From assembly GCF_001194135.2 (NCBI RefSeq), contig NC_068985.1:111024838-111068910 (forward strand): 44,073 nt of DNA, in the 5' to 3' direction. Shown here piece after piece: positions 410 to 464 of the stretch. This DNA comes from Octopus bimaculoides. Its lineage: Eukaryota. The position numbers and the translations under genes were made by a program. Under the pieces are notes generated by a model. The model worked only from the letters and a program-made list of their open reading frames with translations, made no database searches and was not told the origin of the DNA. Positions within the stretch are counted from its first letter, which is position 1. Every line of letters begins with the position of its first letter.

Positions 410-464
410 GTGCCTGATGAATATGTTTGAGATATTTCTGAATATATGAAACTGTTAGTAGCAC
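410..464 (+). ncRNA. Type I hammerhead ribozyme motif (HHR1)
   Basis: Stem I GTGC(410-413)/GCAC(461-464); CTGATGA 414-420; stem II ATATGTTT(421-428)/GAATATAT(440-447), 8 bp including 2 G-U; GAAA 448-451; helix III ACT/AGT with a GTT loop; cleavage triplet GTA 458-460. Confidence 0.7.

What the first reader, a model, noticed from the sequence alone, without database searches (positions are those of the whole stretch)
410..464. Near-canonical type I hammerhead ribozyme in apparent intergenic DNA
Seen: every conserved core element is in the correct register. Stem I is GTGC/GCAC (possibly extended by GTTT/AAAC beyond an internal loop), followed by CUGAUGA, an 8-bp stem II, GAAA, a 3-bp helix III and a GUA cleavage triplet at 458-460. 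The stems pair by complementarity, which a chance match to CTGANGA would rarely provide. Deviation: the 10.1-11.1 pair is A-U rather than the usual G-C. Established: hammerheads occur in Penelope-like elements and retrozymes (Cervera & de la Pena 2014). Inference: it may still self-cleave after A460.
Basis: partly seen in the sequence, partly recalled or inferred. Interest (0 to 1): 0.85.

Follow-up and report, generated by a model that had tools for sequence, protein, structure and literature searches.

The report
Two decayed hammerhead motifs in octopus
The reported hammerhead ribozyme motif is really there and has a second, minimal hammerhead motif 156 bases downstream on the same strand, so the site is most likely a worn remnant of the hammerhead-carrying retroelements common in animal genomes, not a new or clearly active ribozyme.

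Summary
Window 409-465(+) holds stem I (5 bp), CUGAUGA, a 9-bp A-U/G-U stem II, GAAA, a 3-bp helix III and GUA, with cleavage expected after A460. Random models give about 0.001 such motifs per window.

A relaxed descriptor finds a second motif on the same strand at 621-655. It has hallmarks published for Penelope-like-element (PLE) minimal hammerheads: an unpaired base after A9, G10.1-C11.1, palindromic CG at 15.2-16.2 and no loop 3. A second hit within 300 nt is expected about 2e-4 times, and reversed-sequence decoys give none.

Both motifs together are therefore unlikely to be chance. The locus is probably a patch of truncated, inverted hammerhead-bearing retroelement fragments between (CA)n and (TA)n in an Octopus genome.

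"Near-canonical" is not supported:
- No Rfam hammerhead model matches, although a control hammerhead scores 21.5 bits.
- The 10.1-11.1 pair is A-U.
- The hammerhead fold makes up about 0.06% of the predicted ensemble.
- The 3' half is one arm of a -118.7 kcal/mol foldback.
- No tandem repeat, reverse transcriptase or homologous copy was found.

Activity is untested and probably weak or lost. This is an ordinary new member of a known kind.

The parts
409..465 (+). HH1, the reported type I hammerhead motif. Stem I 409-413/461-465, CUGAUGA 414-420, stem II 421-429/439-447 with loop 430-438, GAAA 448-451, helix III 451-453/457-459 with loop GUU, H17 = A460 (predicted cleavage 460|461).
   Evidence: pairs verified. 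(0.001 chance hits per window). (no Rfam hammerhead hit). (hammerhead fold -8.5 against MFE -12.5 kcal/mol).
621..655 (+). HH2, a minimal (PLE-type) hammerhead motif. Helix I AUUU/AAAU (621-624/652-655), CUGACGA 625-631, unpaired A632, helix II GAUC/GAUC (633-636/640-643) with loop UCC, GAAA 644-647, C648-G649 (15.2-16.2), U650 (16.1), U651 (H17; predicted cleavage 651|652).
   Evidence: Nulls. Same-type motifs elsewhere with a covarying helix I. Hallmarks as listed in PMC4209133.
191..513 (.). Foldback (long inverted repeat). The left arm 191-278 pairs with 342-364 and 446-513. The arms are 84.7% identical outside one 83-nt gap.
   Evidence: inverted repeats I2, I3. (MFE -118.7 kcal/mol, z = -9.8). 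(arm alignment).
363..445 (+). 83-nt segment present only in the right arm, bounded by a 2-nt AT microhomology. It carries the stem I 5' strand, CUGAUGA and almost all of stem II of HH1, so HH1 straddles the junction with the repeat arm.
   Evidence: The segment has no terminal inverted repeats by direct reading of the sequence.
793..974 (.). Second palindrome, two 91-nt arms that are 85% complementary. Its arms share the outer roughly 60 nt (..TAGC..ATTGTGTCCTTTAA..) with the arms of the first foldback, but read TTTTAAC..CTAGC where HH1 has AUGAAAC..GUAGC.
   Evidence: alignment score 44, 1.2% of shuffles as high.
82..130 (.). (CA)n microsatellite flanking the repeat patch on the left.
764..787 (.). 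(TA)n microsatellite starting 108 nt downstream of HH2. (TA)n is named as a preferred PLE target in PMC8557442.
129..189 (-). Fragment of a dispersed SINE-like repeat abutting the left end of the foldback. Other copies lie at 30765-30818, 34698-34749 and 40596-40647, and in the Octopus bimaculoides loci L001-L003.

Best explanation
HH1 (409-465) is a diverged type I hammerhead motif, and it is not alone. With HH2 (621-655, a minimal hammerhead of the kind carried in the pseudo-LTRs of Penelope-like elements) it marks a roughly 800-bp patch of truncated, partly inverted fragments of hammerhead-bearing retroelements. These would be PLE 3' ends or pseudo-LTRs, or non-autonomous derivatives of them. 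The patch lies between a (CA)n and a (TA)n microsatellite in non-coding DNA of an Octopus genome.

How such motifs work is established for the family and inferred here. In the element's transcript the three helices bring CUGANGA and GAAA together. The 2'-OH of H17 then attacks the adjacent phosphate, leaving a 2',3'-cyclic phosphate and a 5'-OH. Minimal and short-helix-III versions act as dimers of two copies and are thought to process multimeric element RNA.

This particular HH1 copy is probably weak or dead, for four reasons:
- It has A-U at 10.1-11.1.
- It has an all-A-U/G-U helix II and an unstable helix III.
- More stable competing folds exist.
- In any transcript that includes 191-257, its 3' half is locked in a long hairpin.

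HH2 has no helix III and no partner copy nearby, so it should be inactive as a monomer.

Shown: the motifs, their non-random co-occurrence, the foldback, and the absence of tandem repeats and coding capacity. Inferred: the PLE origin and the loss of activity.
For: - HH1 anatomy was verified. Chance gives about 0.001 per window and none with stem II >=8 bp in 18,000 simulated windows.
- HH2 was found with a descriptor built from the published min-HHR features. Relaxed hits occur at 0.015 per window, at 0.0001 with G-C plus bulge plus no loop 3, and at 1.3e-4 to 2e-4 within 300 nt on the same strand.
- Even allowing one core mismatch and 3-bp stems, HH1 and HH2 are the only hits in the window.
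- Reversed-sequence decoys, which keep composition and hairpin potential, give 0 exact-core hits in 479 kb of strand against 4 in the real sequences.
- HH2 carries hallmarks listed by Cervera & de la Pena 2014: an unpaired nucleotide between 9 and 10.1, G10.1-C11.1 and a palindromic 15.2-16.2. HH1 has their 'larger helix II (7-8 bp), shorter helix I (4-5 bp)' architecture.
- The HH2-type pattern recurs in two animal-like metagenome contigs. One has a 7-bp helix I, and helix I covaries at 4 of 4 pairs across the three sequences.
- The context fits PLE habits: microsatellite flanks, inverted 5'-truncated copies, and mostly single truncated motifs.
- Natural hammerheads with compensated changes at 10.1/11.1 exist.
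- The host is Octopus. The best named relatives of the window's Tc1 remnant are O. bimaculoides and O. sinensis proteins, and the window's SINE-like repeat occurs only in the O. bimaculoides loci.
Against: - No Rfam hammerhead model matches HH1 or HH2 at E<=10, whereas a true type I hammerhead scores 21.5 bits.
- No reverse transcriptase or GIY-YIG signature lies next to the motifs or elsewhere in the window.
- No copy of 191-513, 514-760 or 793-974 was found in about 192 kb of fetched animal DNA, including 68 kb of O. bimaculoides. Family membership therefore could not be shown by homology.
- The flanks of HH1 and HH2 are not similar to each other.
- Of four related repeat arms, only one carries the complete HH1. 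The left arm lacks the 5' half and the second palindrome lacks GAAA and GUA.
- HH1 is thermodynamically disfavoured.
- HH2 sits at the minimum thresholds of the descriptor (4-bp helices, 3-nt loop).
Confidence: 0.55

Rival explanations
1. HH1 is a chance match. An unrelated 83-nt segment inserted into one arm of a foldback repeat happened to bring CUGAUGA plus an AT-rich hairpin next to a GAAAC...GUAGCAC stretch that exists only because it mirrors the other arm. HH2 is then either a second coincidence or an unrelated real remnant.
For: - The motif straddles the junction 445|446, and its 3' half is the complement of 239-257.
- The related arms of the second palindrome lack GAAA and GUA.
- A-U at 10.1-11.1 is what chance hits usually show, 14 of 18.
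- No Rfam hit.
- The hammerhead fold is about 0.06% of the ensemble.
- Roughly 70 loose chance hits are expected in a genome of this size (scaled).
- The field warns of many false positives (PMC6155905).
Against: - A second exact-core motif within 160 nt on the same strand is expected only about 2e-4 times, and under 0.6% even from the empirical bound of the decoys.
- No simulated hit reached a stem II of 8 bp or more.
- The 83-nt difference is bounded by a 2-nt microhomology and has no transposon ends, so a deletion in the left arm is at least as likely as an insertion.
Confidence: 0.25
2. Both motifs are active and form a working cassette. Cleavage after A460 and U651 releases a 191-nt RNA with 5'-OH and cyclic-phosphate ends, which could be circularised as in animal retrozymes.
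For: - Two motifs lie on one strand with predicted cleavage sites 191 nt apart, within the 170-400 nt size range of retrozyme RNAs (PMC7229834).
- GC content is low, as in retrozymes.
- All core bases are intact in both motifs.
Against: - There is no direct repeat: 365-560 against 561-763 aligns no better than shuffles.
- The 461-651 RNA is no more structured than shuffles, z = +0.62.
- Ligating its ends would not rebuild a hammerhead, since AUUU cannot pair with GCAC.
- HH2 lacks helix III and has no partner copy, and single min-HHRs showed no cleavage in the published tests.
- The helix III strands of HH1 and HH2 cannot form a good heterodimer (direct reading of the sequence).
- HH1 is energetically disfavoured.
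Confidence: 0.12
3. The region encodes another small RNA, either a C/D box snoRNA (UGAUGA and CUGA boxes) or a hairpin RNA or microRNA precursor made from the 191-513 foldback, and the hammerhead resemblance is incidental.
For: - Weak Rfam matches to C/D snoRNA models at 415-466 and 396-443 (16-17 bits, E 2.7-9.6).
- The foldback is exceptionally stable.
Against: - The snoRNA scores are far below the gathering thresholds of 55-75 bits.
- No CUGA D box lies next to the terminal stem (direct reading).
- No Rfam family reaches its gathering score anywhere in the window.
- A hairpin RNA would not explain HH2.
Confidence: 0.03

Closest known systems
Minimal hammerheads (min-HHRs) of Penelope-like elements (Cervera & de la Pena 2014, PMC4209133)
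   Same: - HH2 has the unpaired base between A9 and 10.1, G10.1-C11.1, a palindromic CG at 15.2-16.2, no loop 3 and a 4-bp helix I.
- HH1 has the long helix II (8-9 bp) and short helix I (4-5 bp) described for these motifs.
- Both occur as isolated motifs near microsatellites and inside inverted truncated repeats, as reported for truncated PLE copies.
   Different: - No PLE reading frame (reverse transcriptase or GIY-YIG endonuclease) or recognisable pseudo-LTR lies nearby.
- HH1 lacks the unpaired base and has A-U at 10.1-11.1.
- HH2 has only a 4-bp helix II.
- No consensus family could be assembled.
Canonical metazoan type I hammerhead (Rfam RF00163; Schistosoma Sm-alpha, newt satellite 2, cave-cricket pDo500)
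   Same: - Type I topology and an intact 11-base core.
- A short helix III closed by a small loop.
- A GUA/GUH cleavage triplet.
   Different: - Canonical motifs have a 6-bp helix I and a 4-bp G-C-based helix II with conserved loop 1-loop 2 contacts, and they sit in tandem repeats.
- HH1 does not reach E<=10 against RF00163, whereas the hammerhead at L008 4838-4884 scores 21.5 bits.
Animal non-LTR retrozymes (de la Pena and co-workers 2020, PMC7229834)
   Same: - Low-GC non-coding DNA.
- Type I hammerheads.
- Spacing between the two predicted cleavage sites (191 nt) within the 170-400 nt range.
   Different: - There is no tandem direct repeat.
- The two motifs are unrelated in sequence.
- The intervening RNA is not unusually structured.
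Foldback or MITE-like inverted-repeat elements
   Same: 191-513 and 793-974 are long, near-perfect hairpins with related ends.
   Different: No target-site duplication or transposase-type terminal repeats could be recognised, and such elements are not known to need a hammerhead.

Membership tests
Hammerhead ribozyme, type I (general) | Conserved core C3 U4 G5 A6 N7 G8 A9 ... G12 A13 A14 ... A15.1-U16.1, H17 | tested here: met
   HH1 has CUGAUGA 414-420, GAAA 448-451 and U459 A460. HH2 has CUGACGA 625-631, GAAA 644-647 and U650 U651.
Hammerhead ribozyme, type I (general) | Three helices in type I order: open helix I, closed helices II and III | tested here: met
   HH1 has helix I of 5 bp, II of 9 bp and III of 3 bp. 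HH2 has helices I and II of 4 bp each and only the 15.1-16.1 and 15.2-16.2 pairs, which is the dimer-type arrangement.
Hammerhead ribozyme, type I (general) | G10.1-C11.1 pair at the base of helix II | tested here: not met
   HH1 has A421-U447. HH2 does have G633-C643. Rare natural compensated variants at this pair are reported in PMC2837043.
Hammerhead ribozyme, type I (general) | Match to the curated covariance model (Rfam RF00163 and the other hammerhead families) at the gathering score | tested here: not met
   No hammerhead family matched at the gathering score or at E<=10 in searches of 301, 86 and 101 nt. The positive control, L008 4838-4884, scored 21.5 bits with E 0.007.
Hammerhead ribozyme, type I (general) | Conservation of the core with compensatory changes in the stems among homologues | tested here: inconclusive
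   No homologue of HH1 was found, and related repeat arms lack the motif. For the HH2 type, three unrelated sequences show covariation at 4 of 4 helix I pairs, but n = 3.
Hammerhead ribozyme, type I (general) | Loop 1-loop 2 tertiary contacts | not testable with these tools
   This needs a family alignment or a structure. The loops of HH1 (GAGAUAUUUCU and the bulge GUAA) match no consensus I could check.
Hammerhead ribozyme, type I (general) | Site-specific self-cleavage 3' of H17 | not testable with these tools
   This is experimental. Predicted folding is unfavourable: the hammerhead fold is -8.5 against an MFE of -12.5 kcal/mol, with an ensemble fraction of 6e-4.
PLE minimal hammerhead (min-HHR) | Unpaired nucleotide between A9 and 10.1; palindromic 15.2-16.2 (and loop 3 if present) | tested here: inconclusive
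   Met by HH2 (A632; C648-G649). Not met by HH1, which has no bulge and whose ACU-GUU-AGU is only partly palindromic.
PLE minimal hammerhead (min-HHR) | Location in the pseudo-LTR of an element encoding a reverse transcriptase and GIY-YIG endonuclease | tested here: not met
   There is no long reading frame in 1-1104, no Pfam hit on the local ORF, and no GIY-YIG signature in the six-frame translation of the window. Most published motifs are likewise isolated, truncated copies, so this does not exclude descent from a PLE.
Animal non-LTR retrozyme | Tandem direct repeats of 150-450 bp, each with the same hammerhead | tested here: not met
   No direct repeat was found in 1-1104. The alignment of 365-560 against 561-763 is no better than shuffles.
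Animal non-LTR retrozyme | Monomer RNA that is highly self-paired | tested here: not met
   The 461-651 RNA has an MFE of -30.1 kcal/mol, z = +0.62.

The most novel reading that the evidence does not exclude
Octopods carry a so far undescribed non-autonomous retroelement that uses two dissimilar type I hammerheads to cut out a 191-nt RNA (461-651) from its transcript. One of the two has a natural A10.1-U11.1 pair and a long A-U helix II, and the other is a minimal dimer-type motif.
Probability: 0.08. Interest if true: 0.55.

Novelty: new member of a known kind. Interest (0 to 1): 0.3.

Why it matters
If it is real, it adds cephalopods to the animal lineages with hammerhead-bearing retroelement remnants. 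My literature searches found no paper describing hammerheads in cephalopods. It would also supply a natural variant with A-U at 10.1-11.1 that could be assayed.

The case also makes a practical point. A lone descriptor match was not convincing, and curated covariance models missed both motifs. The decisive computational evidence was a second motif nearby. Otherwise the finding is ordinary, since animal genomes can hold thousands of such motifs, most of them inactive single copies.

Tried and rejected
- Rfam at the gathering score on the whole window and at E<=10 on three short stretches gave no hammerhead, only noise-level C/D snoRNA hits. The snoRNA reading was rejected.
- The minus-strand ORF 381-797 covering both motifs is not on record, has no homologues and has no Pfam domain. 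The coding explanation was rejected.
- A chimeric 899-aa query made of every local ORF plus four ORFs 7-8 kb away, meant to reach orthologous or paralogous contigs, gave no hits.
- I fetched about 192 kb around relatives of the window's Tc1 remnant and searched it by blastn for the foldback, the HH2 segment and the second palindrome. None was found. Only L001-L003 (O. bimaculoides) share the window's SINE-like repeat, so the other loci come from other animals.
- The tandem-repeat (retrozyme) model was rejected.
- I suspected the foldback arms derive from the adjacent SINE. No blast support was found, so I dropped the idea.
- CpG decay cannot be used for dating, because the window's CpG observed/expected ratio is 0.83.
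- A core-only match at 32600-32648 has no stems and is chance.

Full report
**What the window is.** The 44,073-base window is a draft eukaryotic scaffold. It has 16 runs of N (8,465 bases), a GC content of 37% in the determined bases, and many (CA)n, (TA)n and (TATC)n microsatellites. It carries a decayed Tc1-type transposase gene at about 31033-31810 (HTH and DDE_3 domains). The best named relatives of that gene are Octopus bimaculoides and O. sinensis proteins. A SINE-like repeat present in several copies in the window occurs in the three O. bimaculoides loci I fetched but in none of the other animal loci. The window is therefore from an Octopus genome or a close relative.

**The observation.**
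- Stem I is 409/410-413 with 461-464/465.
- The core box CUGAUGA is at 414-420.
- Stem II has nine pairs, 421-429 with 439-447, all A-U or G.U.
- GAAA is at 448-451.
- Helix III is A451-U459, C452-G458 and U453-A457, closed by GUU.
- The cleavage triplet GUA is at 458-460.

A strict descriptor finds this and nothing else on either strand. In 18,000 window-equivalents of second-order Markov sequence trained on the window, motifs with I>=4, II>=4 and III>=3 occur 0.001 times per window, and none had a stem II of 8 bp. That is rare for one window, but it scales to roughly 70 loose chance hits in a 2.7-Gb genome. A single motif therefore proves little. The chance hits mostly had A-T or T-A at 10.1-11.1 (14 of 18), which is the candidate's own deviation.

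**Evidence against a near-canonical ribozyme.** No Rfam family reaches its gathering score anywhere in the window. No hammerhead family appears even at E<=10 when only 301 or 86 bases are searched. The only matches are noise-level C/D snoRNA hits driven by UGAUGA and CUGA.

The tool can see hammerheads. A type I motif that I met by accident in locus L008 (4838-4884; G10.1-C11.1, GUC, 5-bp helices) scores 21.5 bits against RF00163 with E = 0.007.

The energetics are poor:
- The 76-nt region folds at -13.3 kcal/mol (z = -1.36) into a structure that pairs CUGAU with GUUAG.
- The best hammerhead-compatible structure of 406-472 is -8.5 against -12.5 kcal/mol, about 0.06% of the ensemble.
- Helix III alone costs +1.1 kcal/mol.

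**The surroundings.** Bases 191-513 form a long foldback with an MFE of -118.7 kcal/mol and z = -9.8. The reverse complement of the left arm (191-278) aligns with 342-513 at 84.7% identity, apart from one 83-nt gap. That gap covers 363-445, which holds the stem I 5' strand, CUGAUGA and nearly all of stem II.

The 3' half of the motif (AUGAAACUGUUAGUAGCAC) is thus the mirror of 239-257, and in the foldback it is fully paired with it. The 83-nt difference is bounded by a 2-nt AT microhomology and has no transposon-like ends. A deletion in the left arm is therefore at least as likely as an insertion in the right arm. The data do not decide which happened.

A second palindrome at 793-974 has arms related to the outer 60 nt of the first. 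It reads TTTTAAC..CTAGC where HH1 has AUGAAAC..GUAGC. Of four related arms, only one carries the full motif.

**The turning point.** Cervera & de la Pena (PMC4209133) describe minimal hammerheads of Penelope-like elements (PLEs). These have a short helix I (4-5 bp), a long helix II, an unpaired base between A9 and 10.1, a conserved G10.1-C11.1, a palindromic 15.2-16.2 and little or no helix III. They act as dimers.

A descriptor allowing these features finds a second motif on the same strand at 621-655: AUUU CUGACGA A GAUC-ucc-GAUC GAAA CG UU AAAU. It shows the unpaired base, the G-C pair and the CG palindrome, although the descriptor did not require any of these.

How unlikely this is by chance:
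- Relaxed hits occur 0.015 times per window.
- Hits with G-C plus bulge plus no loop 3 occur 0.0001 times per window.
- A hit within 300 nt on the same strand of a given site is expected 1.3e-4 times, or 2e-4 with a model trained on the local sequence only.
- Allowing one core mismatch and 3-bp stems still yields only these two hits in the window.
- Reversed-sequence decoys of the window and all loci, which keep composition and hairpin potential, give no exact-core hit in 479 kb of strand, against four in the real sequences.

Even on a genome scale, a chance pair of this kind is expected only about 0.01 times. I therefore no longer regard HH1 as a probable coincidence.

**Is the HH2 type natural?** One scan of JGI metagenome contigs with CTGANGANGATCNNNGATCGAAACGT found two contigs that look like animal DNA.
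- L006 3354-3396 has a 7-bp helix I, an unpaired U, C-gu-G as helix III and GUA.
- L007 4243-4275 has the same box sequence as HH2 but only a 3-bp helix I. It lies in a contig that also holds small heat-shock-protein exons.

The search pattern did not constrain helix I. Across the three sequences helix I is paired in 11 of 12 cells and changed on both sides at all four pairs. Slid controls pair in only 18-50% of cells. With three sequences this is supportive, not conclusive. Rfam does not recognise HH2 either, so its models are not sensitive to this minimal class.

**What could not be shown.** I found no homologue of the locus.
- The ORF covering both motifs is not on record and has no relatives.
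- A chimeric query of all local ORFs found nothing.
- Blastn of the foldback, the HH2 segment and the second palindrome against about 192 kb of fetched DNA found nothing.
- There is no reverse transcriptase or GIY-YIG signature in the window.
- The two motifs are not parts of a tandem repeat.
- The 191-nt RNA between the predicted cleavage sites is not unusually structured, z = +0.62.

The retrozyme model is therefore not met. The PLE link rests on motif anatomy and on context: microsatellite flanks, inverted truncated copies and isolated motifs.

**Verdict.** The most likely reading (about 0.55) is that HH1 and HH2 are remnants of hammerhead-bearing retroelements of the PLE kind. HH1 would be an atypical copy that is probably weak or inactive, and HH2 a minimal motif that cannot act alone.

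A chance origin of HH1 keeps about 0.25. An active two-ribozyme cassette releasing a 191-nt RNA has about 0.12. Another RNA gene has about 0.03.

The finding is a new member of a known kind and of modest interest. The decisive steps are a genome-wide homology search in Octopus assemblies and a simple cleavage assay.

Noticed in passing
L008 4838-4884 (+) (ENA ERZ22157276, contig ctg13698l): A textbook type I hammerhead in an unidentified animal assembly: CUGCA CUGAAGA GACC-ugaua-GGUC GAAA CAGUgucACUG UC UGCAG. It scores 21.5 bits against Rfam Hammerhead_1 (E 0.007). I used it as a positive control.
   Followed up: partly
L006 3354-3396 (+) and L007 4243-4275 (+) (JGI metagenome contigs): Two HH2-type minimal hammerhead motifs in animal-like contigs. 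L006 has a 7-bp helix I and lies about 40 nt upstream of a (TA)n run. L007 lies in a contig that also holds small heat-shock-protein (alpha-crystallin) exons.
   Followed up: partly
window 793-974: A 182-bp palindrome (two 91-nt arms, 85% complementary, no spacer). Its ends resemble the ends of the 191-513 foldback (shared ATTGTGTCCTTTAA motif), so it may be a small family of foldback or inverted-truncated elements.
   Followed up: partly
window 31033-31810 (+): A decayed Tc1/mariner transposase gene in a single frame with four stop codons. It has HTH and DDE_3 domains and is 60-66% identical to Octopus and other animal Tc1 proteins.
   Followed up: yes
window 129-189 (-), 30700-30820 (+), 34698-34749 (-), 40596-40647 (-): Copies of a SINE-like dispersed repeat, each next to a microsatellite. 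The same repeat occurs 11 times in 68 kb of O. bimaculoides DNA and not at all in the other animal loci.
   Followed up: partly
window 11377-11716 (+): Reading-frame pieces that look like a mariner-type transposase remnant (..FHQDNARPHTA....PYSPDIAP..). This is from my own knowledge; Pfam gave only weak HTH hits.
   Followed up: partly
window 23887-24198 (-) and 38405-38875 (-): Two ORF-like stretches share a peptide-level motif (..NW..F.RPRKDE.., ..LNSER..). This suggests another dispersed repeat family. Neither has a Pfam hit.
   Followed up: no
window 433-441 and 620-628: The 9-mer TATTTCTGA occurs both inside loop II/stem II of HH1 and at the helix I/core boundary of HH2. GAAAC(U)GUUA follows in both. 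The wider flanks are not significantly similar, so this may be coincidence or a trace of common descent.
   Followed up: partly
window 32600-32648 (+): A CTGATGA...GAAAC core-only match next to a (TG)n run. It has no stems and I judged it chance.
   Followed up: yes
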